Shown here piece after piece: positions 5,798 through 58,692 of a stretch of 64,000 bases of DNA (its first letter is position 1; each line of letters starts with the position of its first letter). A program made the position numbers and the translations under genes. Below the pieces are notes generated by a model, which saw only the letters and a list, made by a program, of their open reading frames with translations, was not told the origin of the DNA and did no database searches. Source of the stretch: Paraphysomonas bandaiensis (Eukaryota; Protista; Chrysophyceae); contig CBFFRP010000238.1 of NCBI GenBank assembly GCA_965644295.1, forward strand, positions 62,001-126,000. The letters run 5' to 3'.

Positions 5798-8700
5798 TCA
5801 GTGCGTCTTCTTTCCATGTAGCCAAAAGTGATACCTGGCATCCTTGAACGCAGCCAGCCACATATTTCGTTCCGATGCATTTCTGAATACATTAATATGA
5901 TGGTGTCAGTTAAGTATACAAATACATTTTAAAAACTTACGCCGTGTAAAACGTTTTGACAGCACCATTTTTCATTTCTATTTCGAACGGGAATTGATTC
6001 TTTTTACGGTCACTTGATGCATTATGAACACGAATATCTTTTATCTGACTAATAAGCAAGGCATCCAGTCGAGTGGATGGATCATCCGACAAATATATAG
6101 TCAGCGCGTCCTCATCAACCACACACCATCGTTTTGTAGAAACCTTTATGAGTTTTCCCTTGATAATTGTCAAGTATCCGGCGTAATGAATGGGTTCAAC
6201 ATTAGATCCGCTTTCCTCAGTCTCTTTCATTCTCCTCTGCAGTAAGTGAAGAAGCTCCAGTTCACAATTCTCTCTCAAGAAGTGTTCTACGTAAAGCTCT
6301 AGCTGCTTGGACGGGAGAACACACTCAATGAGTCCGCCGAATATAGAAATGCCTTTGCAGCGAGAGGTGTTGGATGGGTTGTTGCTAAGTTGTTTCAATA
6401 CCTGGCAATATGCCTCATCAGCCAACCCTCCATTAGTTCGCGCAATTGCATAGAACTCTTTGGCTAGCATTGGTGGAAAGTTGCAAACTCGATCACCCAT
6501 TGCACCGAGGAGGCACTTAAATGCAGTAGTCGCTAGAGTGATATCATGTGGTTCCGATAAGCGCGTCACAGATGTCGGAATCACTTCGTTGGAGAATTTC
6601 TTTCTGGAATCCTCGAGCTCAGGATCTGCAAAGCGGCGCAAACCACGATACCGATACCACATATAAGTATCTCCTTCGACACTTGTTTGCGATAATACAG
6701 TGGGCGTATCATCAGGATCCACTTCCACAACACGTGCTGGAATTGGCCGCTTGAACACTCCAGACTGCGTTCGAACAACAGCTTTATCCGCGGCAAGACG
6801 CTCGCGCTCTTTCACCATCTGCATTACAGTCCCCCCACATACCTGTCCGCGACGCGCATTTTTATCATCCACCATCACTTCTGGATCAACAACTTTGCTG
6901 GGTGCTGAGGGTGTAAATGGCACCACGGGAGATCTAACGTCTGGTTTTGGAAGATCCGACAAAAGATTCTCTGGTTCAGGCTCTGGTTCAGGTACTTGTT
7001 TTTTCAGTGAAAAGTAGTACTCATTCAACTCGACGTTCAATGCATCCACCATGTCTTTACGATTAAGGAAAGTGTTGAGATCAATCAGTGCTCGTAGGAA
7101 CGCCCCATAATCCTCTCTCCACTGCCCGACGAGATATTTCACATATTCCACCTCGTCATCTTCCACACTCCAGGCAGCGCACTCCTCAATAGCCGCCATC
7201 ATTGCTTCAACGTCACGACCATTCCACGACATATGTGCCTGACGTACACACATCCGAGCTCTCTCGAGGTTACTGACAGTGGCTTGATACACGTCCAGGG
7301 AAGTCGTAGAGGATAAAGCAATTGCATCAGCCGCAGTAATAGCTTCTGATAGTGCGGCAATTCTATAGGGTGGTGAAGAGACCGCCCCAAGAATATCTTT
7401 AACTTCAGCGAGCTTACTTACAATACTACGTCCTTCCGCAATAGCTTCTTCCATCCTTTCTGTACTGTGCAGGAGTTTCAACTGGCGATCAGACAGACCA
7501 TCGATTTGAGAAAGTAAAAAGTTTATTTGTCCAGCATCTTCCCGTTGAATTGCATCCAACAGAGAAGATTCGATTTCTTTTGATTTTTCTGCTTCAGCAG
7601 AGTGCATGTCATGATTCATGATCATCGTACGGTAGAACTCTAACTCCTTGGTACTATTTGATAGGAGTTGCATTTGGTACTTAGACTCCTTTGAAACAAG
7701 TTGCCTGAATTCAGACCACGCTGCCTCCTCACCGACATCCTCAGGTTGGAGTTCAGCTGCGCTACAGCGTAAGGACAGTACATATTCGGCAACCTCCACG
7801 AGAGCCTCAGTCGTCGGATAGAGATAACTCCACCCGGTATCTCCACTATTAAGAGCGCGCAGATTAGATAGGGCTTGCTTCAACTCCGATGTGTTCGACA
7901 AAGAATCATCTGCAGCCACATCTCTGTCGAGGACAGCAAAGAGTTGCTGCAATGCGTTGGTCTCTCGCTCCATGTTATCCAGTCGTTCCTGCACCTGACT
8001 TGCAAGAACATGAAAAAGTTTACGAGCTCTCACGTCTAGTAACATCCCATATCCAACATCCTCCGGACCATCAGGTGATCGCACCAAGAAAGGAGCTGTT
8101 GTAGTAATGCATTGGTTTATGTTATCAATGAGAGTAAGAGTTTTTTTCATTCCATCCGGCTCAGTACTTTTCAGTGAGGATTGGCTTTGAGAAATGATGT
8201 CTTTACAGTCTTCAATAATCTGTGTGCTTGTACGAACCTCATCCGATGCTATTTTAAGCACAGGGTCAATGTCTGCCCCGTCAACAAATGATGATACTTC
8301 TGGAAACTCCTTCAGGTGTTTGTCACACGCAGACCATAGAGTGTTGCTAGATGCGTTGTCAGGAGGTACATATCCACTCTGCTCCTTCACATTGGAGGAT
8401 ATAGCGAATACGCTCCCTCTCCTATGCTGCGGAGATATCATCACATTCGCCCGTCGAGGAGATACTGGTACGTTCTTTTCTGAGGTGGAATGGTAAGACT
8501 GTTTTGACCCCTTGGGAGGAGGAGGAGGGGGGAGGGTTGGTTTCACTGTGGGATCCTGACAAGACGCCTGTCGGAGAGAATTCAAAAGAAGCTCCCGTAA
8601 TTCGACGATGTAGTCTACTACTTGCATCGCAGCTCGAGCGCGCTTGCCAAGCTTCCTCTTTCCCGAGCTCGCAAATGACTGAATCCGCGTCACGTAGTCA

Positions 8701-11700
8701 TCACTCGGAGGGGCACCTGAGTCGCCGCTGTAGGCCTCAATGATGTCGTTTATCATGGCGTTCTCTTCTTCCAGCTGCGCCAGAAGTTCCTCTAGACCCT
8801 TAGCCTGATCCTCAGCAAAACGAGGAGTGTCTTTTCTGATGTCGCGAACATTCTTCATACATTCCTGTAAGGTGTTAATATCAATCTCGTCCTCATCCAG
8901 CAGAGCGAAGACACCTCTCAGAACTTCAGCACCATCTCCGACGAGCTCCTTGTACATATTCTGTAGTTGTATTGCAAGGGGATTCTTGAGATGAAGATCC
9001 CACGATCGTTCAACAGAACTTAACCAGTACTCATCGATATCTTTAGGTTCAAAGTGTTTTATGTTTTGCAGCCGATTCAGTGCTTCAATGCGACTATTGA
9101 CTATGGCAGATTCGCGCTCAATAATTTTCTCATAACTTGTGCGAAGTGGTATCTTCCTTAACTCGATCTTTATCTCTAAAATTGATTGCAACGCCTCGTT
9201 CTCGCTGTCAATAGACTCCGGAGTATCTGACTGTCTCGCATCGATAATGCGGTCAAGTTGGAGAGCCATATCATTTATCTTGGACTTGAGAATTCTAATC
9301 TGTTTCCTAACTCGCATACCACGGTATACCTTCTGCACAAGGATCACCTGGGACTGAATCTCCCTAGACCTTAAAGCTGAAAGCATCCTATCCTCAGTCG
9401 CCTTCCAAAATACCATTGTATTTCCAACCTGAATATTTTTGCAGGCATTTTCCATATTGGGCAGAGTGGAGAGTAGTCGGACCATTTCCTCACAAACGTC
9501 TTTCGCATTGTAGAGTCCTGCTACACAGCTGAAGCGCCGGTTAGTTTTATCTCGTACCAGTGGCCCATAACGATTAATAAAAACCTCGTGCTTGAACTGA
9601 AAATTATAGCCCCGCTTACGAATAGCTAACGCATCAAAGGCTCCCGACTGTTTTAGTTGCTGGTGCACACACACACCGTGAAAAAACTGGGCTTGCTTTG
9701 AGTCATTCGGCTTAACACAGCGAATAAAATGAGGAACTGATTCATTCAGTTTTCGAATCAGATCATCCAATTGTAACTTGAACTGCCCCCCAACAGTGAG
9801 TTGCTTTGGCTTGGCTCGTCCCTTCATACTTTTCTCTTCCTCCTCCTGTCGGAGTTGCTCTAATGTCTTGGGGGGCTCGAAAGACAAATAGCTCCGCTTA
9901 ATCATGGCTTCTAAATCCTCTCCTAGCTTATCTTTGTTCTTATCAAGGAACTCGTGTACCTTGTAAAACACCCTATAAAAGATGTTAGAAGACGATGACC
10001 AATTGCATAGTGGAACAGTTCATACTGCAACTTCAAAAAAATTACGACACACATAAGCTACTGACCGTCCAGCGTAATGATCAATGGCAAAGCTGTCCTT
10101 GGAAGCAGCCCCTTTTGCTAAAAGAAAACGCGGGTGCTTCGCATGCTTCTCCTTCAGTTTGTTAAGAAACGTTGTACCGCTGGACCGTGGGACTCGACAC
10201 TCGTCGTCAAGAATAGCTAATATTCCATTAGCTCCTTTCATCTCAATAAGATCCAAAACGATCTGAATAGTATATTCCTCTGATTGAACAAGATATAGTT
10301 TGAAAACAACCTACCTGATTGTCTGCAAAACTAAATTTTTCACAGGGAATGTTCTCCCGTTCACACGCTTCCATCTCATCTTTGAAGGTGTGCTGATTAA
10401 AGTGTTGTTGCAACTTTTCGTTCGCATAATTGATGCAGAACTACATACAGTATACATTAACACTAGGAAACTGAGTGATAACTAATAAGAGAACCTGTTC
10501 GAAACCGTTGAACTCAAATATTTCGAATCCGAATATATCAAGTATCCCGATGTATCGCCTATTAGAAGGCGCGGGTTTTCTGAACTTTCCTCGCTCTTCA
10601 TTGATATCACTGTTTGCATTGGGATCAATCATCGCCAGGTTAGTACGGTCTACCAGCCAGTCGAAGCAGTTCTTATACATCGCCTTACACAGGGCATCTC
10701 TCGCCTCAGAGGCCTGCGAAGCACTCAGTTGGACGGAGTTCACTTCGCCCCGTACAAGAAGTTCCCTCGTTCTCAGTCGGGAAGAGATCTCCTCCGCTGA
10801 CAGGCCCAGCAGGTTGGATGCATGCTCCAATGACTCTTTACACAGCGCGGTGGGCTCTACTTCGCACCCACCGGAGCCACTATTCGAATCTTGGAAGGTA
10901 ATATTTCCTAGGTGGAGAATTGCAGCACAAACAGCAAATGCATCGTTTAGCTCCGGTTGAGTCATGCCTAGCTTTATACAGGCGAACTCCATCTCGTGAA
11001 ACTGCTCCGTGTCACAAACGTTCGGAATAGATGTACACCCACTTTGAGTAAGGAATCTATAGTTCTCTGGAACGCCTAAATTGAGACGTGATAGGTCTGC
11101 CCTTGAAGACTTAACCGCTGGAGAGTCAAGTTCCCGCAGTGTCTGTCGCCTCATATAAGACGGGAGAATAGAGGAATCCTTCTTACTGGCTTGATCCTCA
11201 ACGGCGGCACGGCAAATCTGGTAGAAAATGTGATATGATCGCTCCCCCTCAGCCTGTTTGTGCACGCGACTCTTCTCCAGTAGATAATTAGTGGTTCCAC
11301 ACCCCACTACCACTCCGTCCAGTTCAAAACTTAGGTTCATGAACTTGCCAAATCGGGAGCTGTTGTTATTTCGCAAAGTCTTCGCGTTCCCAAACGCCTC
11401 CAAAATGGGATTCGCGGAGAGAATTTTCTGCTCGATCCCTGATGCGGATCCCGCAGCTTCAGACAAGAAGGACATGCAAAGTTTAGTTGTCTCTGTTTTC
11501 CCTGAACAATGTACACACTAGTTAGACGGATGGATAAGTGGCAATCATCATCGAGAGGGGTGCCTTGCCTGCTCCAGATTCTCCGCTTATAAGTATAGCT
11601 TGGTTTTTTCCATCCCGCAACATAGAACTGTACGCACGACGAGATATGTCGAATGGATGGGGTTTCAATTGGTCCTTGCTATCATATTGGAGGTACTTTT

Positions 11701-17607: not shown

Positions 17608-20218
17608 TTATGGTCTCACATCTGACCCTGATTTACTATCTTTCTCCTCACAATTAGGGAGTTTATTGAACTTTCGGGAGGATAATTTCGGCGAGGCAAC
17701 ATCTCGAGGGAGTGCCGTGGTATCAACTGCTTGTTCACACGAACCGTTTTGTGTACGAGGCGAATTTTCTCCTACAGATATGACAATCAAAAACTAGCCA
17801 ATGATTGGGCTGGGTGACTCACGTGTTTTCGCCGATGGAGTCCTCTGTCCGTTCTCTGAGAGTGCGAGTAAAAAATCTATGGTACAAACAATCACGCAAA
17901 TTTCCGTCAAAACATGATATACTGGTAACCTGCATAGGAGACTACTCCAGTGCCGTTTCTGTCAAACATATTGATTGCTCGATGAATCTGCTCTGCAACC
18001 ACTGGATCCAACTCTGATTTAGAAGCAAGGGTAAGCACAACATAATTCGTATTTCACAGTATCTGCAGACCTGGCGGGGATGGGGTAGCAGTCTGTGCCT
18101 TGCTGTAAAGCAATGGGGCAGATTTTGCCGAGAGAATCGGAATTACAGAAGACGACTTTTTGCGTATCTTAATATCGCTATTGGAGTGTTCACTCTCCCC
18201 GCTGGCACCAAACGACAATGCTACGGGCGCGCTTGTCATAGATGACCGACGGGGAGCAGTCATCATCGGCATGATATCTTTTAACATACTCGGTCTAAGA
18301 AATACAGTTTATACAGTGACAGCGACAATAAATATTTCAGATTCGTTACCTTCTCAGGATATTTCCCAGAGACATCGATCGTCCTCGTCCCCCAACACTA
18401 TGGTCGCTTGGATGGGGCCCATCATCCGCACTGTTATCGTCCGATTCTTCATTCGTGGGTACAATCTTTCCGGATTTATTTGACACCGCCGATTGTGGTT
18501 TCGAGGAGGGTGGAGAGGCTGAAGTAACTTTACCCAGCAGATTCTGTGAGGATGTCTGCGACATAATTACTGACCGCTTACGGGCAGCCGAGGTCACACT
18601 TAACACACGTTCCATGTCATTGAATGTAATATACCCTATGTTCAAAGCTTAGATTCCCAGCAATAAAACACATATCACTTGTACCTTTCTGATCTGTATC
18701 AAGAATTTGGAAAGCTGTATTGAGTGCTTGTATATCGAAGTCTCGAGGGTCCAATGTTGCTGCAAGGAATTCTGTAAAGGAAATTTGATTATCCCCATTC
18801 GCATCAACAGCCTTAAATATACAATCAATATCCTCTTCGGATAGCTTCTCAGTATCCCCGGTGTTAAATATATTACATGCCAACATCGCATTCCTGAACT
18901 CCTCTCGCGAAAGGGTCCCGTTCTTGTCCACATCGAAAGACTGAAAAAACGCCCTTCTGTCAGCAGTTTTGGTCTGCGGCATGTTATACGCTACAGCGAG
19001 CATACTCGTCTGATGAAGCACAGAGGCATCACTATGTCTCTTGAGATTCTTGAACGCCGTCTGAACCATGTTCGCATCCCCGGAAGAGTCAGACATGATA
19101 GACGTAGACGAAAACTTGCGCGCTCTGGCAACAGGGTCTGCAGGCTCATCCGTGCTATCAACATCATCAGCATCTCCAGAGTAGACCCCATCGTCATTCT
19201 CCAAAAACCATGGGTGTTCTAAAGCTTCCTGTGCACCCCAACGCTGCTTGTAGTCATGAGTTAGCATCTTTTGCGTAAAGTCCATGGCAGTCGAAGAAAC
19301 TCTCTTCCAGTCCTTGTGGCGGTAGTGATAGCGACCCATTAGAATATTTGCCATCACCGAACACTTCCCATCACTATCTTCTCCAGAAGCAGGATGCAGA
19401 ACTAGGGCTTCAAAAGGCTTCCTACCACTCAGCAAGGTAAAGGCCACCACCCCCGCACTCCATACGTCGCACCGTTCGTCATAGGACTCTCTAAGCACCT
19501 CAGGGGCAGTGGCGTAAAGGGTCCCACACCTGGTCTTCATAGGAGTTGCACCAATAAATCGCGTACCCAAACCGAAGTCAATCAGCTTTATCTGTGCATT
19601 CCACCCCGAATGCTCCCGCATTATATTTTGTAATTTTATATCGCGGTGGCATATTCCCCGGTTGTGCATATGAGCAATAGCGGAAAGGAGCTGTCGAATA
19701 ACAGATTTCGTCGTGGATTCGGGAAGCACTGCAGTGGGGTTGAACTGAATCCGCTCTAGCCAATGTCCTACATGTCCTCCCGTACAAAGTTCCATAACAA
19801 ATCCAACTTCATTAGGTGTATCATATACTGCAAACAGGCGAACAATATTCGGATGATCAATATCTTTCAACAACTTATACTCTCTCTCTATTCTATGCCT
19901 CTTCCCACTCTCTGTATTAACTAATTTAATCGCATATTCTACTTTAGATTCTCTATGAATTCCAGTGACTACTACACCATATGATCCTTTCCCTAATAAT
20001 GAATCCTCTTTAATTAAGTATGTTTCATCGATTGGTGTTGTAAATGTCATTACAAAATTTCCAGTTAGAGTATTGCGATGTTCTAATTTCCATTTTTTAC
20101 GTGATTCTTGAAGTTTATGCCTTTGAATAATTTGTCGATATTTTTTATAAGCAGCATATATAAGTATGATACCACCCACAGCAGAACATACTGCAATAAT
20201 AATGACAATAGAGGCCAT
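17608..20218 (-). CDS. Calcium-dependent protein kinase (CDPK-like) with N-terminal TM helix and four EF-hands; about 6 exons
   Basis: GKGSYG, YAIK, HRDIKLQN, DFG, CGTLYATAPE; junction segment; EF loops DVDKNGTLSREE, DANGDNQISFTE, DTDQKG/YITFND, DRNGTGVVSYA/D. Confidence 0.88.
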
Positions 20219-31987: not shown

Positions 31988-33424
31988 ATGATTCATTTCA
32001 GTGTGCGTCATGTTAGACGACACTTTAATTGTGTTTGGATGCGATGTGCCAGTGATCGAGCATTTGACTGCTTTGTAATCGGTCGAACTGGAAGTATCAC
32101 TAACATATCACTCACATTTGAAGACTTTAAACGAGATGGATTACATGCAAGAGATTTTTTTGCCCTCGATTTGTTCTCAGATATTTCTTCCTGTGAAACG
32201 CAAAAGAAACATAGCAACTCAACATTAATAACACCTTTTCTCTTCCTTCCAAGACCGGGTTGCATTATAGTATCAATGGGAAACATGAAGAGTATTATAT
32301 ACGCGGATAGATTATTGGTATTCAATCCCAATCGGCCTGTAGTTAAACAGTGGTCTAATGAAGTATGTGGACGAATACATGAATTCCCGGAAGATTCGTC
32401 AAGTACCTCTTTCGAACTCTGCATCCTTGAGGAGATTCTGAAAGAGATGTGCGAGATGTTCGATCGCAGACTGAGATTATTTACACCCCTTGCTGAGAAT
32501 CTTCTTTTGCGTATTGATAATGAATTTGACGCATTTGAGGGTGTTCAGAAACTTGTTCCCCTACAAGATGGAATGCAGGCATTCGAAATCGAAGTTAGGG
32601 AGGCTCGTGAAAATCTCCTCAAAATGCTAGAGAACGATGACGATATGCGGGCCCTGCTATTGAGCTCAAGTGTACGGAAATGCCCCTCAGAGAGCGAAGT
32701 TGCCGTTGAACTATTACTTGAGAGTTATGCGGCCCGTTTGTCCCATCTCCTACACAGCATCACCTATATACAGCAAAAAATGGTTTCTAGGTCTCAAATG
32801 GCCCAGATGAGTATGACTATGCAGAGAAATCGTATCATGCGTATGAATCTACACACTAGCATAGGAGCCATCACACTCGCCTTCTGCTCGGTGGTTACTG
32901 GCGTGTTCGGCATGAATCTTCCTAGTGGGTTGGAGGAAACGCATGGGCTATTCATACCAGCAGTTATGGTGACTTTAGCTGGTAGTGCACTTATTCATGG
33001 TACCATGTTATGGACCATATTTGGGGGTGGTCTCAAAAGGAAGTATGAGCAGGAAGTGGGATACATGGAAGCGATGAAACGTATGCTGAGTGACATGGGA
33101 AGTTTGGATCACGCCGTAAAAACCGCATTCGCATGTATAGATGGTAGTTCAGTTCATACTAAATATGTTGAAAATTTAGAGAAATCAGGAAATGAAGACA
33201 GCACGCATAGGCAATCATTGTCCTCAAGGGTAGTTAGCAAGGCCCTCTTTCGTGAACTGATTCAAGAAGCTCGAATTGGGGCACCTAAACGGCACATAAA
33301 TAGAAGTATCCCTGTTGTCGATGAAGTTGATGTATTTTTCGACCTCATGGACACAGACGGTGATGGTTTACTAGAAAGTCATGAAATTAATAAGCGTCGG
33401 TCATCAAGTAACGTGAGTAGCTAA
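31988..33424 (+). CDS. MRS2: MRS2/CorA-family Mg2+ channel (likely mitochondrial) with C-terminal EF-hand
   Basis: Arg-rich presequence; LHARD; FELCILE; VELLLESY; RNRIMRMNL; TM1-GMN motif (GVFGMNL); TM2; EF loop DTDGDGLLESHE. Confidence 0.9.
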   Translation: MIHFSVRHVRRHFNCVWMRCASDRAFDCFVIGRTGSITNISLTFEDFKRDGLHARDFFALDLFSDISSCETQKKHSNSTLITPFLFLPRPGCIIVSMGNMKSIIYADRLLVFNPNRPVVKQWSNEVCGRIHEFPEDSSSTSFELCILEEILKEMCEMFDRRLRLFTPLAENLLLRIDNEFDAFEGVQKLVPLQDGMQAFEIEVREARENLLKMLENDDDMRALLLSSSVRKCPSESEVAVELLLESYAARLSHLLHSITYIQQKMVSRSQMAQMSMTMQRNRIMRMNLHTSIGAITLAFCSVVTGVFGMNLPSGLEETHGLFIPAVMVTLAGSALIHGTMLWTIFGGGLKRKYEQEVGYMEAMKRMLSDMGSLDHAVKTAFACIDGSSVHTKYVENLEKSGNEDSTHRQSLSSRVVSKALFRELIQEARIGAPKRHINRSIPVVDEVDVFFDLMDTDGDGLLESHEINKRRSSSNVSS

Positions 33425-49957: not shown

Positions 49958-52900
49958 TCACTGTGACGACTCATACATACTGTCATCCATGCTCTCCATA
50001 TCATCCTGAGCATCGGAACACGTTATGGATAGAGTTAAAATGCTTCCCGAGGGAGTTGTCTCGTCTCCACGCAAGAACTCTACCCGCATGATATTTCCCT
50101 TGTGAGTGATTAGTTCGCCATACCGCAGGTCACACACAGCGAGCACTTGCGATTGACCATCCGCACGTCTAACTATCTGAATTCGGCAAGCGCGAACATC
50201 TGCGCTAGTGGAGCGATTCGTTACAATAACATCGCGAGACTTCAGCTTCAGGACACCGTGAATGAATTCAGCACGCTCGATCTCATAAATACCAGTCTCA
50301 CATATAATTTGGCAGGTAGTTGAAGTTAAATCTGAACTCTGAATAGTGGATGATATGTTCTCAATATTATTTAGTTGGATGACCACAGATTTGATTACTT
50401 CATTATCCATATGCGCTATCACCCCCGAGTCTTCCGTGAGAGTGTCTGATGCGCAGCTACCAGAATCATCCACAGTAGAGGACTTGCCCTTTCGTCTTCT
50501 AGAAGACCTCGTTTTTGTCTCACGCCGACTTCTCGACCTCCTAGAAATATTCGACGAATTGTCATCACTTACAGTCACAGTCACATCCTGGACAGAAAGC
50601 TGCATGTCATCTTCCGAATTCGTCTGGATAACAGAGACCGCAATCTTGTCCAGAGTATCCCCGATTTCAGTCTGCAGTTGAGATAGTTTCAAGTAAAGGG
50701 ATTTCTCGACAGCAGTGATATCGCTTTTGACTTCATTGCGCATGTCCTCTTCGACACTTTTGGCTAGATCCAACCTCATTGCTTTATTCATGGGAAACCA
50801 TCCAATATCATTCATTGCCACACTGCGTCTAACATACTGCTCTAATCCATCGTCATCATCCTTGTCTTGCTCCCATATATAAAATATGAAATACAAATAA
50901 TTCCACATGTTGTGATCGAGACGAATGTGTATTTTGAACCCATTAGGAACCTTTGAAGCGCGATCGAAAACCTGTTTGTCGATACCGCACATGAAACACT
51001 TCTCCGTCGTATCATGTTGACGCTCAAGTTTCTTCGCACGTAAGTCACCAAACGTATCGATGATGATACCAAAGATAACATTCAGCAAGACAATCAGCAC
51101 TACCAGGAAAAACATAAGATCGATTAAATATCTCTCGCCCAATGTGTGAGTCATTTGATCTCCAATTCCACCTGGTAGACGAACCCCATAACTCATAGTT
51201 GTCTTCAGGCACTTATACAAATTTTCACAATCACTAATAACCTCCTCTTGCATTTCATTTCTAAAAAAGAAGAACTGCACAAATATGTTAGGCACATGTG
51301 CAGGCAATTATAAGGGTGCTACTTACAATAACAAACGCAAAGATGTACATTACGAAGAGACCGAGCACCAATGTCATCGCCAATTGCTTTCGCGGATATA
51401 TGACAGCATTCAATACATCGCGCGTGGTTGAATTCTTGACAATGATGTCCAGTAACAAGAATGTAACAAACGTGTCACTATAATTGATTGCCAGGAGACA
51501 GAATATTAAATACATAAAGTAGTACATCGTAAGACCATCAGTCGCTGTGTTGATGACTGTCCACGTTTTACTATATCCCGCGGCGAGATTCGACTGATAC
51601 TTGACTGGAACTCGCACGACAAGAAATAATATTAACGTAAACGTGGCGAACACGAGCTGAAAAATATTTAAAGCGCGGACAACAATCTGCACCTCGCGTG
51701 GCAACTTGGGTTCTCCAGAGCTTGCAGAGTAATAGCACAGCAAAAGAAAATTAATAATCAGCGCCAGAAAAAATGCAATCCACGTGGCTCGATTTTGATT
51801 TGTGCGGCTAAAAATTCCACTGACGTTCCACTCTTTCAGCACTTGTTGGTGCTTTACCTCTCGGTACAAGTCATGTGCCCGAAAAACAAAGTCCTGTAGC
51901 TTGCTCTCCAGGTTACTTCTGTCCACATTCTCAACGAGGTTATCTTTGGAAGGCTTAGCGAGGTCACGGCATATATCTGGAACATGGAAGAAGCGCCTTT
52001 GTAGTTCTCCTCTCCATAATATCTCTACACACGCCACAGATGACCCTGCAACATCCTGGGCATCTTTTTGAAGGCCAAGTTCATCACGGAGGCTGGGTTT
52101 GTAGTCGCAGAGCATCTGAAGAAGCACAAGAGACTCCGTCTGCAGAGTTGCGGCTGCTTCTCCCAGTTCTACAGCAACGTCTTCATCATCCACAGTTGGA
52201 GTACACATCATCTGGATAATGTCCAAGTGAATCACACTGAGCACTCGTTCGTACACAACTTGATTTCCACCCTGCCCCTCCAGAAGTCCTTGGAAGATAT
52301 CGATCCCCGTTTTTTTCAACTCGAATTCGGCCTCTTCGTCACAATCACGTATTGGTTTCGCTCTCATGAGACGATTAAGAGTTTCAACTAGTTCTGTATT
52401 TAACACAAAATGTTCTTGATTTTTTTCACATGGTCCTTGTATTACTTCCAAAATTGTGGCAGAAATTCTCGTGGCAGCATCTGTGTTAGTCTTACAAGGT
52501 ATACGGCTAAGGCAATTCAAAAATGCCACGAAATCATCGAGCAGGTTAACAGAAGTAGGATTACAAGTTTGCTCACGCATGATGTCCTGGTTGGGCTGAT
52601 AGTGCCCCTCACACATCAACTGTAGAAACCTGACTATAATAATATCCTCGGGCAGCTCAACATCCTCATCCTCTTCGAGAATTATAACATCTTTCCAGTT
52701 GTGCCACTCAATAAGCTTTTGGATCGATATACGCATCTGACGGAAAAACAACTCCGAGTTGGAACCCTGCAGGTGATTGAACATTGTCTGTTGGACAGGG
52801 AGGTTGCCACCCTCCAGAAACAACATCGCCACACACAGTTTTACAGACTCAAGCATAAGCCCCGAATCGATGCCAATTGATATCAAATCCAAACAAAGAG

Positions 52901-55900
52901 TAGTCGCACCACAGTTGTTTAAAGCAGTGATGACAGGACCAGCAGCAATGTCCTCTTCTTCGCCTCCATCTTCATCCCTCTCGTATATACTCATCCCCCA
53001 TCGATTCTCAATCATTGTGCGGAAGGAACGGATAATCCACGTGGTTGTCTCCGTGCACCTCGCATCAAGTCGTTTCTCGCCATCTTGTACCTCCAATCGG
53101 TCTCTAACATGGGAAACGAGCTTCATAATCAAAGCTTCATATCTCACATCTGCTACTACGTTCTCATTTACTGACGGAAGCTTCTCTATCTTAGCAATAA
53201 ATTCTTTGTTTTCAGAGGCAGTTAATTCCTTGACTTCCTCATCCTCCTCAAGCGCCTTTATAAATACGCTGTACTGCGTTAGCACTTTGACAGATGGTGA
53301 CATTTCCTCATCTTCATCTTCTTCATCCAATAGATCAGACGCACTATTCATTTCAAACATTGCAGGGTCCACAATTAGTGTCCTACCAGCGCTTTTGTTA
53401 AGCCCATCTAAACTACTAATCAGATAGCCCTTGTGAGTACTATTGAGAATAGGCGAGTGAAGATCAAATAACGATTTTAATTTTTCAAAAAGTGCACCGA
53501 TCAAGTCATTTACTTGCTGCATTGTCATTTGAACTTTATCGTTCACTGAAACTGTTTCTTCGGCTCTTATTTTTGATGGGTCGTAGCAGTAATTGAAAAA
53601 ACCTGACACTATCATTGCACAAACAATAACATACTCCGACTTTTGTCGACTCACACCACTTCTTTCCCACCCAACCTTCTCTACCAGACGGAAGTCTTCC
53701 ACAGCGTCATCAAAAATTGGGACAAAAGTCTCAAGAAGTCTCCACAATCTAGCAGATTGCGATAAACCTGGTATTATGATTTCCACTTCAATAATGGCAT
53801 CGAATAAAAACAAACCCAAGCGGCTTTTAACAATGAGTAAACTTCTCTCATCCAACATCGCGTCAATAATATCCTGATAGTCAAACACTGACTGTACTTT
53901 AGCCTCTACGGTTGTAATATTTACCCTCCCTACTGTGCACCCAGAAAGGACACGTAAGAACTCGAGGTGGTACGCTAGCTCATGTGGCAGTTCAAAAACA
54001 TCGATGTCCTTTACATCCGCATAGGGAGCCATGAGTTGTACCTTTTGCTCATAGGAAGGGTCGTCCACAGGACAACAGAAACTAACCATTTTAGACAGTC
54101 GCGAGGGTGCAATTAATTGTTTCACAATTTCGTATTGGTTCTCGAGAATATTTCTCTCCCCCACATTGGTGATGGAAGCCAATAGGGTTAGATACTGGGG
54201 ACGACGCCCGATACGACAGACCTTATCTGTGAAATCGCCAATGAGGTAGCGTGGACAAGCCCGCATCAGCTCGTCGTTGTCAACAAATATAGCGTGAAAA
54301 ATCTTGTGACTACCGATTTTCATATCGATAGTGCCCAGAAAAAAATCTAGCTCTGAAAAAGCTAAAGCTTGATTTTTCTTGTTACCCACAACAAACCAGT
54401 AGAACAGTTCGTTGCACATACTAACGACCTCATGATTCACATCTTCCGCAATTTCTGAGTCGTCTTCGTACTCATTCAATAGACGAAGAACATCAAGACT
54501 GATTTCCATAAAGCCAAGATTGCGAAGCATATCCTGCACCTCAGTATCGGCCTCGTAATCTTCATTGAAGCAAAGAACTTTGCGACGGTGTCTACACATG
54601 TCGAGTAGCCGAGAGAGAATCGTCTTCGTTTCGTTATATATCAACCTGTCCTCTTCACTCTCTTGTTGGCACCATAATTCATTCGTTTCGGCATTGTGAG
54701 CAAGTTTTCGCAGCATATCTGAAATTTCATGCCGCTGCTTCTCTCGCTTGGATGAAACAAGCAATTGAACATTTTTAGCATTCTTTAGAAGAATACTTCT
54801 AGTAGAATGAGCAGCCATGAGAACATCAAGTACAACTTGGACAAGATTAGGATGGACAAACATTAGGTTGTCAATAAATATATCGTCAAAAGATCGTTTA
54901 GCAACAAGAGATAGCTCTCTTGTGCTCTCTACTGCGTCTTCAAAAATTTCTGCAGGGGTCCGCTTATCAAGCCCTTGTTCCCAACGGTAGAATGACCGCA
55001 ACAAAATCGACAAGTTTCTGTCCTCCAATATTTTTTCGACATACGAGAGAATATTAACGGCAGCCACCATTGTATCAAGTTCATGTGAAGGTGTCTTCAG
55101 ATAACGGATGGGCATTTTCCAGTCGTCGTGCTTCTTTGCACCCAAATCTTTCAGTTTCTGAACCAGCCTGGCGGCACGGAAAACGCGAATCAAACGTACA
55201 AGTCTCACCGCCCTGAGTGCCTTCGCAAACTCTGCCCCAGATCCTGACAACTGAGGTGTACCAAGAATCACCAAATCGATAATTACGACACCCACGTCAA
55301 TAACATTGAGTATATTACGAAAAAAGGAGTGAAAGTTGTTATTGATATAGACGTAGCAATAGTAGCGGAGTGAAACTTCCACGCAGAATATGGATATAAC
55401 TACATATTCAAAGTATTTGTACCCAGCATTTTGAGAGTGCGTCAACAACTGTACAACATTCGCAGCCAATGCAACAACAACCAAAAGTATGATAAACAAC
55501 AGCACACTCAACGAGTCCAAGAAATCATATGTCTTCTTTTGCCAAGGTGTGGCCCTTTCTTCTCCTTCTATGTCCTTTACGATGTCTTCTTCAACGGTTT
55601 CGTTTAGAGCCGACATGCTCAGTTCAGACGCGACTCGGGCCATGTTCTTTGATCGCAATCGTCGTATCTGCGGGGTACCACTGCGCTTTCCCTTCAATCT
55701 TTTCCTTCCCGATACCATTGTGGTAGCCTCAGTTGTGTGCACATGCACTTCCATCTTACGCCTATCCAGTGCTCGAATCAGTGGATCGATAACATCTTCA
55801 AGTCTCTCCGAAGTTCCATAGAAGTTAAACTCCACTAATTTATACATTAGCTGCATCATGTACAAAGACAATGTGTTCCAAAAATTTCCTTTCATTTGAT

Positions 55901-58692
55901 CCACGTGCTCGGATATTACATCCTGGAGCAGACCAAACAAGTATCTTCGCTCGGGTTCAACATAAGGGAGTTGTGGGATTTCATTTTTAGTCACTTGACT
56001 CCATGATCTCGTGAGAGACGGTATAACACTGACAACCTGAGGATCCCGATCCACATACAGATGCAGTACCAGGTTTACAGCAGCAGACTTAAGATACTCA
56101 TTCACTTGCATCTTTATCATAGCCACAAGCGCCTCGTATGGAAAAAGCGGCTCCAAGCTACGCATAGCGATGTAGTTTCGGCTCAGGCACATCTCTGCAG
56201 CCAAAAACAACTCGGAAGTAAAGTATTCCGCGACAGCCATCTTCTTGTCAAACACAGACATCTGGCGGTCATTAAATCGGTTTTTGTCATCCACATCCGC
56301 TACCATTGCCCCGCCTGGCTGAAACAAATCCGCCACAGGAACTTTATCCACTTTAAACAACTCTGCTGAGCTGAACCCAGGGCTACTCGTGTACCAGGAC
56401 AAAAATAATTGTGGTGCCCCATCAGTGACCATAGCGTACCCAAGAGTAGGGCTTGTTCCATCGAAGTATAGCTTCTTGTTACCGTTCCAGTGGACTGGCA
56501 CTCGAACACTATCGCAGTGGACTTGAATAATAATATCACTTATATCCTTGAATACAACTTCCGATACAGTGATCTGGTTTCCAACAACACCGCGACCAAG
56601 GCAGGAACAGCAGGCTCGCAGCAGCTTCAGATACATGCTGTTCATACTCGACTCTTTTAGTTTTTCAGTGAAAATCGTAATTTCGCGGACACCAATTTTC
56701 TCCTCCTGTAGCTCCATATTGGTTGCCAACATGTCTGTAACACATTTTGCTGCAAGTGACTGAGAGCCAACGTGCGCCAGAAGAATTGGCATAGCATCCG
56801 CAACAAACATTTGATTGCGTGGATTGAGAAGAACTGTATGGTACAAGAGGTTCAGACACTGTTTTATAATAGCTTGACCCATCCGCACAACCGCCTTCTC
56901 CTCCTCTGATTTAAAAGCCAGTGTCTTAGACCCAGATACGCTATCCAAACGCACAGATATCGGAATTAGTTTATCCAACAGCTTCATAAGAATATCCAAC
57001 GTGCCCTGATCACAAATCATGTTCTGTCGATTGCTGCGAACGAGATCAAGAGGCTTCTCTGCCAGTGCAATATTTTCACATGAAATAGAGTACCCTTGTG
57101 CAAATGAGTTGATCCTCTGCATTGTTGTCTCAAAGAACTGCAGCTCGCTATGATCTGTGTTGGGCCACACAGTACCAGAAGAATAATCCGAATTCTCAGG
57201 TATCTTCGTACGACGTAAAGTGTTCTTGAGATAGTTTCTTGCAGACACACCTACATAAACATCCCAGGGCTCCTGAATTACTCCCCTGTTGTCTTCCGTT
57301 ATTGGCACAGCTGTGCCCACTTCTTCTTTCCCTTCTGTGTACCGATGGATGAGCAGACTGACAGCTGCATTGCGATCCCGCGTACCCACGCAGGTATATA
57401 CATCAGCACTATCATCATATTCTCCCCTGCTAACCCATACACCACTCTGAGAAATCTGCACTGCCTTTGCATTTGAAAGGTATGTAGCAGTGCTGAACAG
57501 CTCATTGACGTTGAATAGGGTTCCAGGGTGGGCAATGTCGTGTGTTGTTGAGAGCAGAGGAACTAGTCTAGTGCCTCCAGAGGGATCCTCCATCAGAATA
57601 TTTTCCATTGACAAATACCGCCCTGTGTTCAAATTGCGGAATCTCACTAAGTCAGATTTCCATTGCACAGGGCCTCCAACTACAGTAAGTTTCGACTCCA
57701 ATACCCATAGAGCAGTTGTGTCCAACTCCCCTTTGGTGCTCGCCGGCTGAATTACAATTTCACTGTTATCATCAACAGTAGGAATTGTAGATGCTCCATC
57801 CTCTCTGTCCTCATTGTTGGCAAAGATAGATATGTTAGAACGCGTCTCAGGATCATGAATGAAGACCAACTGAGAACAGAAGAGTAGATTGGGGTCAGCT
57901 GCATCAGAAACATTCTGGAAACAGACAAGTTTCCATGAAGTATTCTCAAGTGAACAGTTGACCTCATGAGAGTATTCCGTAGGCGGGGGCTTGTCGGAGC
58001 AGTGAATGAACTCATTTGGTCTTTCTGATACTTTAAAATACACCTCTGTGTTACTGAGGATGGTATCACCTTCGCGATCTATCTTATAGCGTGGGAGAAT
58101 TTGTAACCAAGAATATGTACTTCCTTCAGCGGAGAGTGATATACGAATATTTTCCCTTTCGTCTCGCGCCAGCTGGTCCGGTATAATTGTTACAAATTTT
58201 CCCGATTTGACATGAAGAAGTTGAATAACATCACCAAAGCACACAGGAGTACCGATCTTCTGCTTCATGTAGGATTCATTTAATTTATTTTCATTATCCC
58301 GACCACGCTACACATTACCGTCAATATACGAAGTGAAGTATACAATAAACCTACTGATACCTGCAGCGCCTTCAGAAATTTAGAGGTATTACCATCCTCC
58401 ACATTATTTACATCTACTTCATAGGTGAGCAAAAACTCTTCCAGCTCACGAGATGCAGAGTATTGTCGTTGCAAATGAATACAGAATAAAGCATCTTCAA
58501 AGGATGACAATGAGTTGCTGACAACAATATCCTCCAGTAATATTCCCTCAGCACAGAGATAGCTATTGATCGTCAAGTTTTTGATAGTGATGTAATCTCC
58601 AATTTTTAGAGAGGCTGCAATAAAAAAAGTATCAATATGCAGTTGAATAGCAAAATACACTATTTACCATTCTCATTAGAGTTAAACTCCAT
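49958..58692 (-). CDS. IP3R/RyR-superfamily Ca2+ release channel (~2858 aa; exons 58692-58668, 58614-58361, 58307-51327, 51274-49958) with inserted voltage-sensor domain and C-terminal C2-like domain
   Basis: SLKIGDYITI, FGDVIQLLHVKSGKF (suppressor/MIR), VRFRNLNTGRYL, RIH repeats (RQNMICDQG, VQDMLRNLG, NKKNQ), RIH-associated RFLQLMCEGH..NQDIMREQ, EVIQGPCEKNQ, 6 TMs, filter GVRLPGGIGD, TM6 LLNVIFGIIIDTFGDLR, Zn-finger CFMCG..H..DHNMWNY. Exon phases join in frame. Confidence 0.95.
55141..55550 (-). other. S1-S4 voltage-sensor domain embedded in the IP3R-like channel
   Basis: S1 VLLFIILLVVVALAANVVQLL; S2 FEYVVISIFCVEVSLR; S3 NILNVIDVGVVIIDLV; S4 KALRAVRLVRLIRVFRAARL. Confidence 0.9.

What the first reader, a model, noticed from the sequence alone, without database searches (positions are those of the whole stretch)
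55141..55550. IP3R/RyR-family channel carrying its own voltage-sensor domain: candidate single-chain voltage-coupled Ca2+ release channel
Seen: inside the single long exon 3 of the IP3R-like gene, at residues ~1015-1150 of ~2858, there is a complete four-helix VSD. S2 has the counter-charges and charge-transfer Phe (E..S.F..E...R), S3 has N..D, and S4 is K-AL-R-AV-R-LV-R-LI-R-VF-R-AA-R (1 Lys + 6 Arg in i+3 register). This is in addition to the normal C-terminal 6-TM pore (GVRLPGGIGD). Known: canonical IP3Rs and RyRs have no charged S4 and no TM segments in the cytosolic region; in skeletal muscle RyR1 borrows the voltage sensor of a separate protein, CaV1.1. The insert lies between FNFYGTSERLEDVIDPLIRALD and ELDTMVAAVNILSYVEKILEDRNLSILL, which align by eye to the helices flanking a variable loop of mammalian IP3R1, and four TMs keep both flanks cytosolic. 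S1 has Ala where Hv1 has its selectivity Asp (LVVVA vs LVVLD), which favours a sensor over a proton pore. Inference: the VSD could sit in the plasma membrane at ER-PM contacts, giving excitation-release coupling in one polypeptide, or sense organellar voltage in cis. I do not know this architecture from characterised proteins, but novelty needs a search.
Basis: partly seen in the sequence, partly recalled or inferred. Interest (0 to 1): 0.95.

Follow-up and report, generated by a model that had tools for sequence, protein, structure and literature searches.

The report
Calcium-release channel with built-in voltage sensor
A marine protist gene for a giant IP3-receptor/ryanodine-receptor-type calcium channel carries a complete, conserved and transcribed voltage-sensor domain in place of a known regulatory loop, so membrane voltage, not IP3, may control calcium release within a single protein.

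Summary
Window 55141-55550 encodes a full S1-S4 voltage-sensor domain (VSD) inside the 7-kb exon of an IP3R/RyR-family gene. Pfam, PDB sequence searches and an AlphaFold model (2.1-2.8 A to NaV1.7 VSD-IV) agree.

- **Expression:** spliced transcript contigs from two runs keep the VSD.
- **Distribution:** the genome has about 6-8 such paralogs, and the scan's first readers flagged two other loci. At least 40 cluster representatives share the architecture, including a chrysophyte and the green alga Cymbomonas.
- **Conservation:** the gating residues are near-invariant, and 38 of 48 sequences keep seven S4 charges.
- **Insertion site:** the insert replaces the human IP3R3 "wedge loop" (Pro897-Glu958), which controls channel priming.
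- **Ligand sites:** the canonical IP3 contacts are gone. The activating Ca2+ site is kept.

Most likely this is a voltage-modulated, Ca2+-activated channel with the VSD in the same membrane as the pore. That function is inferred, not shown. Nine literature searches found no description.

The parts
49961..51274 (-). Last coding exon (438 codons; stop at 49958-49960). It holds the pore helix, selectivity filter, S6, a Cys/His linker motif (CFMCG...H) and a long C-terminal tail.
   Evidence: Pfam Ion_trans positions 146-239; sequence; frame and length; splice joint seen in transcripts.
51158..51187 (-). Selectivity-filter motif GVRLPGGIGD (RyR-like GGIGD).
   Evidence: Read directly from the sequence.
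51275..51326 (-). 52-nt GT..AG intron, phase 0.
   Evidence: Skipped in contigs of runs X1 and X2 and of metatranscriptome X4, retained in the DNA-like contig X13.
51327..58268 (-). Long exon (2314 codons counted from the first ATG; the true acceptor lies a few codons upstream). It encodes the beta-trefoil/MIR region, RIH1, the VSD insert, RIH2, RIH_assoc and TM S1-S5.
   Evidence: ORF; Pfam; unbroken in 8.8-kb spliced transcript contigs from 51327 to at least 57000.
55141..55550 (-). Voltage-sensor domain (exon residues 907-1042).
55440..55511 (-). S1 helix (exon residues 920-943). It has no acidic residue at the Hv1 selectivity position (Ala933).
   Evidence: Model helices; column composition A31/S7/T6/D2.
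55341..55427 (-). S2 helix (948-976) with E954, F961 (charge-transfer Phe), E964 and R968.
   Evidence: Conservation: F 47/48, E/D 48/48, R 47/48.
55245..55334 (-). S3 helix (979-1008) with N988, D991 and D998.
   Evidence: D991 is invariant (48/48) and D998 is kept in 46/48.
55140..55235 (-). S4 helix (1012-1043, 32 residues in the model) with K1016 and R1019/1022/1025/1028/1031/1034.
   Evidence: All seven register positions are basic in 38 of 48 sequences and R1025 is invariant.
55551..55760 (-). N-terminal linker: basic, low-complexity and predicted disordered.
   Evidence: pLDDT below 50. Length varies from 26 to 127 residues across the family and identity is 11%.
55089..55139 (-). Short C-terminal linker from S4 to the scaffold, containing the conserved W-x-x-P-x-R-Y motif (55101-55121).
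   Evidence: The distance from R1025 to R1055 is 27-33 residues, with a mode of 30 in 22 of 48 sequences. W is kept in 40/48, P in 43/48 and R in 46/48. pLDDT is 79-95.
55764..55829 (-). Scaffold helix before the insert (FNFYGT...RALD). By extrapolation from the alignment of preceding residues to ITPR2 775-884, it ends at about hIP3R3 890-897.
54999..55082 (-). Scaffold helix after the insert (ELDTMV...SILL). It aligns to IP3R1 from residue 968, which is hIP3R3 ~960.
57768..57782 (-). Beta-trefoil-2 positions that align to the IP3R1 IP3 contacts R265-R269. Here they read P-T-V-D-D.
   Evidence: phmmer alignment to 5xa0, counted residue by residue. Posterior confidence is moderate.
57012..57038 (-). 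ARM1 positions that align to IP3R1 R504/K508/R511. Here they are S/N/C.
   Evidence: Family-profile alignment to ITPR2; per-sequence table.
56811..56831 (-). ARM1 positions that align to IP3R1 Y567/R568/K569. Here they are N/P/R.
52599..52616 (-). MCEGHY motif. E1887 aligns to hIP3R3 Glu1882 of the activating Ca2+ site.
   Evidence: Alignment end-points 179-257 vs 1873-1961; residue list from PMC10613215.
52428..52451 (-). LEVIQGPC motif. E1941 and Q1944 align to hIP3R3 Glu1946 and Gln1949.
51327..51782 (-). Transmembrane S1-S5 of the canonical channel domain (exon residues 2163-2314).
   Evidence: Hydrophobic segments in the translation; coordinates; homology to the P0011 TMD.
58283..58660 (-). 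Probable upstream coding exon for the first part of the N-terminal beta-trefoil. Its limits are not determined.
   Evidence: The Ins145_P3_rec match in the long exon starts at profile position 98, so about 97 positions must be encoded upstream. The ORF translation resembles an IP3R N-terminus by eye only. Not tested and not joined.

Best explanation
The gene encodes a tetrameric IP3R/RyR-superfamily cation (Ca2+) channel. In it, a regulatory loop of the central linker domain, the 'wedge loop' of human IP3R3 (Pro897-Glu958), has been replaced by a complete four-helix voltage-sensor domain of the CaV/NaV/Kv type. SHOWN: the insert is real, transcribed, and conserved with all gating-charge and charge-transfer residues across a large family. 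The canonical IP3-contact residues are absent. The activating Ca2+-site residues and an RyR-like filter are present. The linker from S4 to the scaffold is short and of nearly fixed length, whereas the N-terminal linker is long, variable and disordered. INFERRED: the VSD is inserted co-translationally into the same membrane as the pore, with both ends cytosolic. Changes in that membrane's potential move S4. The cytosolic end of S4 pulls on the scaffold helix that lines the CLD/ARM1/ARM2/ARM3 cavity, the place where the mammalian wedge loop biases ARM2 between resting and primed states. Voltage thereby sets how readily cytosolic Ca2+ opens the channel. On this view voltage takes the place of IP3 as the priming input of a Ca2+-activated channel. 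Which membrane this is (ER, another store, or the plasma membrane) is unknown.
For: Architecture and VSD identity. The VSD is kept in spliced mRNA from two runs in two studies, and the splice is also seen in a marine metatranscriptome. About 6-8 paralogs in the same genome all keep the VSD signature. Eighteen close homologs and at least 40 cluster representatives at 50% identity have the order IP3R-N / VSD / IP3R-mid / IP3R-C. Pfam confirms the architecture in Cymbomonas and two metagenomic members. Conservation: S3 Asp 48/48, S2 Phe 47/48, S2 Arg 47/48, seven basic residues in S4 register in 38/48, and S4 is the best-conserved segment (53% identity, against 42-43% for the flanks and 11% for the N-linker). 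Linker asymmetry. Insertion site mapped to the wedge loop, and the loop's regulatory role. IP3 contacts lost. Ca2+-site residues kept. Precedent for a VSD driving a non-pore effector through the cytosolic end of S4 (SLC9C1, VSP): PMC13095418.
Against: There is no functional data of any kind. The geometry is unresolved: in solved IP3Rs the central linker domain belongs to the cytosolic assembly and is not membrane-adjacent (my recollection of the structures, not measured here), yet the short C-linker demands that it lie within a few nm of the bilayer holding the VSD. The docking test of the VSD against the channel's own TMD gave no verdict. Loss of the IP3 contacts is clade-wide and also occurs in VSD-less relatives, so it does not specifically tie the VSD to replacement of IP3. 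One subclade has let the VSD decay or disappear, so the sensor is dispensable in some lineages. ER membrane potential is generally thought to be small, which makes the physiological signal unclear if the channel is in the ER (established knowledge).
Confidence: 0.58

Rival explanations
1. Trans arrangement. The pore sits in the ER or a store membrane and the VSD sits in the apposed plasma membrane at a contact site, so plasma-membrane depolarisation is relayed mechanically to the release channel within one polypeptide. This would be a one-chain version of CaV1.1-RyR1 coupling.
For: The insertion is in the cytosolic cap, not next to the TMD. The short fixed C-linker places the scaffold close to whichever bilayer holds the VSD, which is awkward for the pore's own membrane if the canonical IP3R shape is kept (inference).
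Against: Multi-pass segments of one nascent chain are inserted at one ER translocon, and I know of no protein with two multi-pass domains in two different membranes (established knowledge). No targeting feature or data supports it. The basic N-linker fits ordinary positive-inside insertion in cis.
Confidence: 0.07
2. Non-sensing role. The four helices act as an extra membrane anchor, an oligomerisation or targeting module, or a lipid (e.g. phosphoinositide) or ligand sensor, with no physiological response to voltage.
For: Some VSD-like domains (TRP and IP3R/RyR S1-S4, TMEM266) have no established voltage-gating role (PMC13095418). One subclade tolerates a degenerate or absent insert.
Against: An anchor does not need seven S4 charges in register, an invariant S3 Asp, a 47/48 charge-transfer Phe and paired S2 acidic residues kept from green algae to stramenopiles. 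Where the domain does decay, the charges go first (P0020, P0017/18), which implies that they are what selection maintains elsewhere.
Confidence: 0.15
3. Conducting VSD. The domain itself passes protons or cations (Hv1-like or omega current) and supplies counter-ion flux during Ca2+ release.
For: Hv1 shows that a VSD alone can conduct, and Ca2+ release needs charge compensation (established knowledge).
Against: There is no acidic residue at the Hv1 S1 selectivity position (Ala in 31/48, Asp in 2/48). The hydrophobic plug Phe and a full arginine ladder are intact. The closest sequence and structure matches are CaV/NaV/Kv/VSP sensors, not Hv1.
Confidence: 0.05
4. Artefact. The VSD is an unspliced intron, an assembly chimera or a pseudogene fragment.
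For: None found.
Against: The reading frame is continuous over 2326 codons. Spliced 8.8-kb transcript contigs run through it. The same architecture is found in 6-8 paralogs and in dozens of independent assemblies.
Confidence: 0.01

Closest known systems
Mammalian IP3 receptors (hIP3R3 / IP3R1 cryo-EM structures)
   Different: The 61-residue wedge loop (Pro897-Glu958, with PKA site Ser934) is replaced by a ~220-residue insert holding a four-TM VSD. The IP3-coordinating residues R265, R269, R504, K508, R511, Y567 and R568 are all substituted. The filter is RyR-like (GGIGD).
RyR1-CaV1.1 excitation-contraction coupling
   Same: A CaV-type voltage sensor is paired with an IP3R/RyR-superfamily channel. 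The Ca2+-sensor region of this protein is in fact closest to RyR in the PDB, and its VSD is closest to CaV domain III/IV.
   Different: In muscle the sensor and the release channel are separate proteins in two membranes. Here they are one polypeptide, most likely in one membrane. No SPRY or RyR-repeat domains were found.
SLC9C1 (sperm Na+/H+ exchanger with a VSD) and voltage-sensing phosphatases (Ci-VSP/TPTE)
   Different: The effector here is the cytosolic regulatory apparatus of a giant tetrameric channel. The VSD is an internal insertion with both ends tied to the scaffold, not a terminal module.
Voltage-gated cation channels (CaV, NaV, Kv, NavAb)
   Same: The VSD fold and signature are the same: S2 E-x6-F-x2-E-x3-R, S3 N-x2-D, and S4 R-x-x-R repeats.
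   Different: No S4-S5 linker or pore domain follows the VSD. The pore is ~1100 residues downstream and belongs to a different channel family with its own uncharged S1-S4.
Protist IP3R/RyR-like channels without a proven IP3 site (e.g. ciliate CRCs; from my own knowledge, not tested)
   Same: They are a divergent branch of the superfamily in unicellular eukaryotes, multi-paralog, with the IP3 contacts not conserved.
   Different: I know of no report of an internal VSD in those.

Membership tests
IP3R/RyR channel superfamily | N-terminal Ins145_P3_rec/MIR beta-trefoils, two RIH domains and RIH_assoc. | tested here: met
   Pfam: Ins145_P3_rec 1e-17, RYDR_ITPR 2e-24 (2 stretches), RIH_assoc 4e-20. 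MIR is weak, at 20.5 bits against a cut-off of 25.6.
IP3R/RyR channel superfamily | C-terminal 6-TM domain with a GG[IV]GD selectivity filter. | tested here: met
   S1-S5 lie in the long exon. GVRLPGGIGD and S6 lie in the last exon, which matches Ion_trans positions 146-239.
IP3R/RyR channel superfamily | Activating (juxtamembrane) Ca2+ site: two Glu plus Gln/backbone (hIP3R3 E1882, E1946, Q1949). | tested here: met
   E1887, E1941 and Q1944 align by end-point counting to 7t3p/6dqj. The residue list is from PMC10613215. The third ligand (backbone Thr in the JD) was not examined.
IP3 receptor in the strict sense | Basic/aromatic IP3-coordinating residues (IP3R1 R265, T266, T267, G268, R269, R504, K508, R511, Y567, R568, K569). 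| tested here: not met
   Here the aligned positions are P, T, V, D, D / S, N, C / N, P, R. The identity of the contact residues is from established knowledge of IP3R1. The beta-trefoil part of the alignment has moderate confidence.
Ryanodine receptor in the strict sense | SPRY domains and RyR repeat (RY1&2 / RY3&4) domains. | tested here: not met
   There is no SPRY or RyR-domain hit in Pfam at E<=0.01 on the 2326-residue exon or the last exon.
[quoted passage not shown] | Four-helix bundle fold. | tested here: met
   AlphaFold model with pLDDT above 90 over S1-S3 and ~80 over S4. It superposes at rmsd 2.1-2.8 A on NaV1.7 VSD-IV and matches Ci-VSP, CaV3.2 and CaV1.1 VSDs.
[quoted passage not shown] | S4 with at least 4 basic residues at every third position. 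| tested here: met
   Seven here (K1016, R1019-R1034). Seven in 38 of 48 family members and at least five in 47 of 48.
[quoted passage not shown] | Charge-transfer centre: S2 aromatic plus acidic residue, and S3 Asp. | tested here: met
   F961 47/48, E964 (E/D 48/48), D991 48/48.
[quoted passage not shown] | Gating-charge movement in response to voltage. | not testable with these tools
   This needs electrophysiology or voltage-clamp fluorometry.
Hv1 voltage-gated proton channel | Selectivity Asp in S1 (human D112), and conduction through the VSD. | tested here: not met
The S1 column is Ala here and A31/S7/T6/D2 in the family.

The most novel reading that the evidence does not exclude
This family is a natural single-polypeptide solution to excitation-Ca2+-release coupling. 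A CaV-type voltage sensor, spliced into the wedge-loop position of an IP3R/RyR scaffold, replaces IP3 as the priming signal of a Ca2+-activated channel. It arose before the split of the green-algal and stramenopile members, or spread between those lineages. It would be the fifth kind of effector known to be driven by a VSD, after pores, the phosphatase, Hv1 itself and SLC9C1, and the first in which a VSD acts on a channel through its cytosolic allosteric machinery and not through an S4-S5 linker.
Probability: 0.45. Interest if true: 0.95.

Novelty: new variant of a known kind. Interest (0 to 1): 0.86.

Why it matters
Voltage control of intracellular-type Ca2+ release channels is known only through a separate sensor protein, CaV1.1 acting on RyR1. 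How that mechanical coupling works and how it evolved remain open questions.

This family offers a compact case shaped by natural selection. The sensor is covalently wired into a defined allosteric site, the wedge-loop cavity that governs ARM2 priming in human IP3R3. It could be studied by cryo-EM and electrophysiology to learn how movement of a membrane sensor is passed to the giant cytosolic gating assembly.

It also widens the list of effectors that VSDs can drive. The 2024 review 'Voltage sensors' lists only channels, VSP, Hv1, TMEM266 and SLC9C1.

The proteins already sit in public databases, labelled 'hypothetical' or 'MIR domain-containing'. The second Ion_trans hit is easily mistaken for the pore. 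Marine protists with several paralogs each may therefore have a layer of electrical-to-calcium signalling that current channel surveys do not count.

Tried and rejected
- **Complex prediction** of the VSD (P0011 1015-1180) against the same protein's TMD (2265-2545) returned 'no answer', score 0.00. This is not evidence either way.
- **ESM Atlas feature search** gave no usable hit.
- **phmmer of a 200-residue ARM1 piece against the PDB** found nothing. A family profile was needed.
- **Does loss of the IP3 site track the VSD?** It does not. VSD-less relatives lack the same residues, so I dropped that argument.
- **Taxon labels.** Two cluster look-ups and two contig look-ups gave only Cymbomonas and Pedospumella. 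The long ENA contigs belong to one unnamed metagenome assembly, ERZ25071330.
- **IQ-TREE did not finish** in the time allowed, so the tree is FastTree with SH-like support and a midpoint root.
- **'Diatom' host.** This is the label in earlier notes on the genome, and I considered and set it aside. The nearest named silicon transporter is from the chrysophyte Ochromonas triangulata (66%), and no named diatom SIT appears among the 120 hits listed. So the statement that diatoms lack IP3Rs (PMC11085791) is not clearly contradicted.
- **Exon joining.** Every search used single exons or database proteins by reference.
Full report
**What is in the sequence.** The finding lies on the minus strand. Window 55141-55550 translates, in the frame of a single 2326-codon ORF (51288-58268), to four hydrophobic helices with the textbook marks of a voltage sensor. 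S2 reads E-x6-F-x2-E-x3-R. S3 reads N-x2-D. S4 has one Lys and six Arg at every third position. Pfam finds Ins145_P3_rec, a weak MIR, two RYDR_ITPR stretches and RIH_assoc on the same exon. Between the RIH domains it finds an Ion_trans match confined to profile positions 6-118 of 241, which is S1-S4 without a pore (E 4e-12 in context, 6e-14 for the 136 residues alone). The channel's own S1-S5 follow about 1100 residues later. The pore helix, the filter GVRLPGGIGD and S6 are in the next exon (49961-51274), after a 52-nt GT..AG intron.

**It is expressed and it is not an artefact.** Assembled contigs of 8832 and 8787 nt, from two runs of the same organism in two studies, lack the 52-nt intron (51275-51326) and run unbroken from 51327 to 57000, straight through the VSD. 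A marine metatranscriptome contig shows the same splice. A third, DNA-like contig keeps the intron. These are contigs, not raw reads, so they show that the VSD-containing mRNA exists. They do not show that no other isoform exists.

**It is a family.** The window's own 62.6-Mb genome has at least six to eight loci that match the VSD and its flanks, and their translations keep the S2/S3/S4 signature. First readers of this scan had flagged two such loci on other contigs. A search with the VSD and flanks found 18 full-length IP3R-like proteins, down to 35% identity, with the VSD at the same place. An exhaustive search with the VSD alone found 326 hits. Local comparison showed at least 40 representatives (clusters at 50% identity, 2000-3700 residues) with the order IP3R-N, VSD, IP3R-middle, IP3R-C. 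The next-best hits are ordinary four-domain CaV/NaV channels. The named members are three paralogs in the prasinophyte green alga Cymbomonas tetramitiformis, annotated 'hypothetical' or 'MIR domain-containing', and one in the chrysophyte Pedospumella encystans. The host of the window has at least seven silicon-transporter genes. The nearest named one is from the chrysophyte Ochromonas triangulata (66%), and no named diatom hit was listed. I therefore regard the host as a marine chrysophyte-like stramenopile, not a diatom as earlier notes suggested. The published statement that diatoms lack IP3Rs (PMC11085791) is not clearly challenged.

**Selection maintains the sensor.** Over 48 sequences reaching down to 23% identity:
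- The S3 Asp and one S4 Arg are invariant.
- The charge-transfer Phe and the S2 Arg are each kept in 47/48.
- The S2 acidic position is E or D in 48/48.
- All seven S4 register positions are basic in 38/48.

S4 is the best-conserved stretch of the whole region, at 53% mean identity to the window's protein. The scaffold flanks are at 42-43% and the N-linker at 11%. S1 carries no Hv1-type Asp.

In a midpoint-rooted FastTree of the post-VSD region, three kinds of member form one nested, well-supported subclade inside the VSD-bearing radiation: those with a weak VSD, one with a degenerate insert (four hydrophobic helices but only two S4 Arg), and those with a 115-residue hydrophilic loop instead. 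This looks like secondary decay, with the charges lost first. There is a caveat: the sampling was driven by similarity to the VSD, and the tree has no outgroup.

**Where it is inserted, and why that matters.**
- The residues leading up to the scaffold helix before the insert align to ITPR2 775-884.
- The helix after it aligns from IP3R1 968, which is hIP3R3 ~960.
- The insert therefore replaces hIP3R3 Pro897-Glu958.

Paknejad et al. [quoted passage not shown] It stabilises the extended ARM2 conformation, opposing the retraction that primes the Ca2+ site, and it carries the PKA site Ser934.

The two linkers of the VSD are very unequal. The N-terminal one is basic, disordered and 26-127 residues long. 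The distance from the invariant S4 Arg to the Arg of a conserved W-x-x-P-x-R-Y scaffold motif is 27-33 residues, with a mode of 30 in 22 of 48 sequences, and it is modelled with pLDDT 79-95. This is the arrangement expected if S4 movement is transmitted mechanically to the scaffold, as in VSP and SLC9C1 (PMC13095418).

**Which ligands remain.** The positions that align to the IP3R1 IP3 contacts are substituted as follows:

| IP3R1 residue | Here |
|---|---|
| R265 | P |
| T266 | T |
| T267 | V |
| G268 | D |
| R269 | D |
| R504 | S |
| K508 | N |
| R511 | C |
| Y567 | N |
| R568 | P |
| K569 | R |

Canonical IP3 binding is therefore very unlikely, and the protein should not be filed as an IP3 receptor in the strict sense. 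It also has no SPRY or RyR-repeat domains. The loss is clade-wide and is shared by the VSD-less relatives, so it does not by itself link the VSD to the loss of IP3 control. In contrast, the activating Ca2+-site residues are present: E1887, E1941 and Q1944 fall on hIP3R3 Glu1882, Glu1946 and Gln1949. This region is closest to RyR in the PDB.

**Most likely mechanism (inferred).** I propose a Ca2+-activated channel of the IP3R/RyR superfamily whose priming step is set by membrane voltage through a VSD in the same membrane as the pore. Cis placement follows from co-translational insertion of all TM segments at one translocon, and from the positive-inside N-linker. The unresolved problem is geometry. 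The short C-linker requires the central linker domain to sit close to the bilayer, which is not how I recall canonical IP3R structures. So either the cytosolic assembly is arranged differently, or the membrane is strongly curved, or, improbably, the VSD sits in an apposed membrane. A docking prediction of the VSD against the TMD gave no verdict. The host membrane is unknown. If the channel is in the plasma membrane, it would be an unusual voltage-gated Ca2+ entry channel. If it is in a store membrane, it would sense store potential.

**Novelty.** Nine full-text searches, and targeted reading of a diatom channel survey, an ER-calcium evolution study, an oomycete IP3 review and the 2024 'Voltage sensors' review, found no mention of a VSD inside an IP3R/RyR-type protein. 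The searchable library excludes most subscription journals, so a prior description cannot be ruled out. I rate this a new variant of known kinds, a new domain architecture built from two well-known modules, with high interest.

Noticed in passing
G000 contigs C46:103369-104715, C152:175323-176750, C288:422684-423964, C182:89723-91009, C324:248532-250058, C426:42964-44435, C409:8414-10069 (loci L002-L008): There are about six to eight paralogs of the VSD-bearing IP3R-like gene in the same 62.6-Mb genome. The C426 copy has its VSD split across two frames with stop codons between them, which means either an intron or a pseudogene.
   Followed up: partly
P0019, P0021, P0022 (insert ~residues 880-1030); P0020 (868-1089): Relatives in one subclade carry a 115-residue hydrophilic loop, or a four-helix insert with only two S4 arginines, between the same RR... 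and P-x-R-Y-x-K boundary motifs. This is a natural series of VSD decay and loss that could serve as ready-made controls.
   Followed up: partly
P0200 versus P0202 (Cymbomonas tetramitiformis): Two database entries are almost identical over the post-VSD region (branch length 0.0035), but one shows no VSD match. This is probably two gene models (NCBI and EukProt) of one gene, or possibly an isoform without the VSD.
   Followed up: no
L010:1-1427 (ENA metagenome contig ctg580655): A second IP3R-like gene (Ins145_P3_rec, RYDR_ITPR) lies about 600 bp from VSD-bearing P0052, on the opposite strand. The family also occurs as neighbouring copies.
   Followed up: no
G000 contigs C348, C406, C398, C150, C405, C298, C149 (L011-L013): There are at least seven silicon-transporter genes. 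The nearest named relative is from the chrysophyte Ochromonas triangulata (66%), and a 'Symbiodinium microadriaticum' SIT fragment at 77% is probably a contaminant in that assembly. The host is a silicifier but probably not a diatom.
   Followed up: partly
window 52299-53171 (-): The Ca2+-sensor/RIH_assoc region is more similar to ryanodine receptors than to IP3 receptors in the PDB (E 2e-10 against 5e-08), and the filter is GGIGD as in RyR. The family sits between the two animal branches and not inside either.
   Followed up: no
window 18620-20218 (-), 31988-33421 (+), 5940-9971 (-): The neighbouring genes are a CDPK-type kinase with EF-hands, an MRS2-like Mg2+ transporter and a myosin with a MyTH4 tail. 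These are ordinary eukaryotic genes with no obvious functional link to the channel.
   Followed up: no
window 53997 and 56850: Two single-base differences (A>G and G>A on the + strand) separate the window from all three near-identical contigs of organism A. They are strain or allele differences or assembly errors.
   Followed up: no
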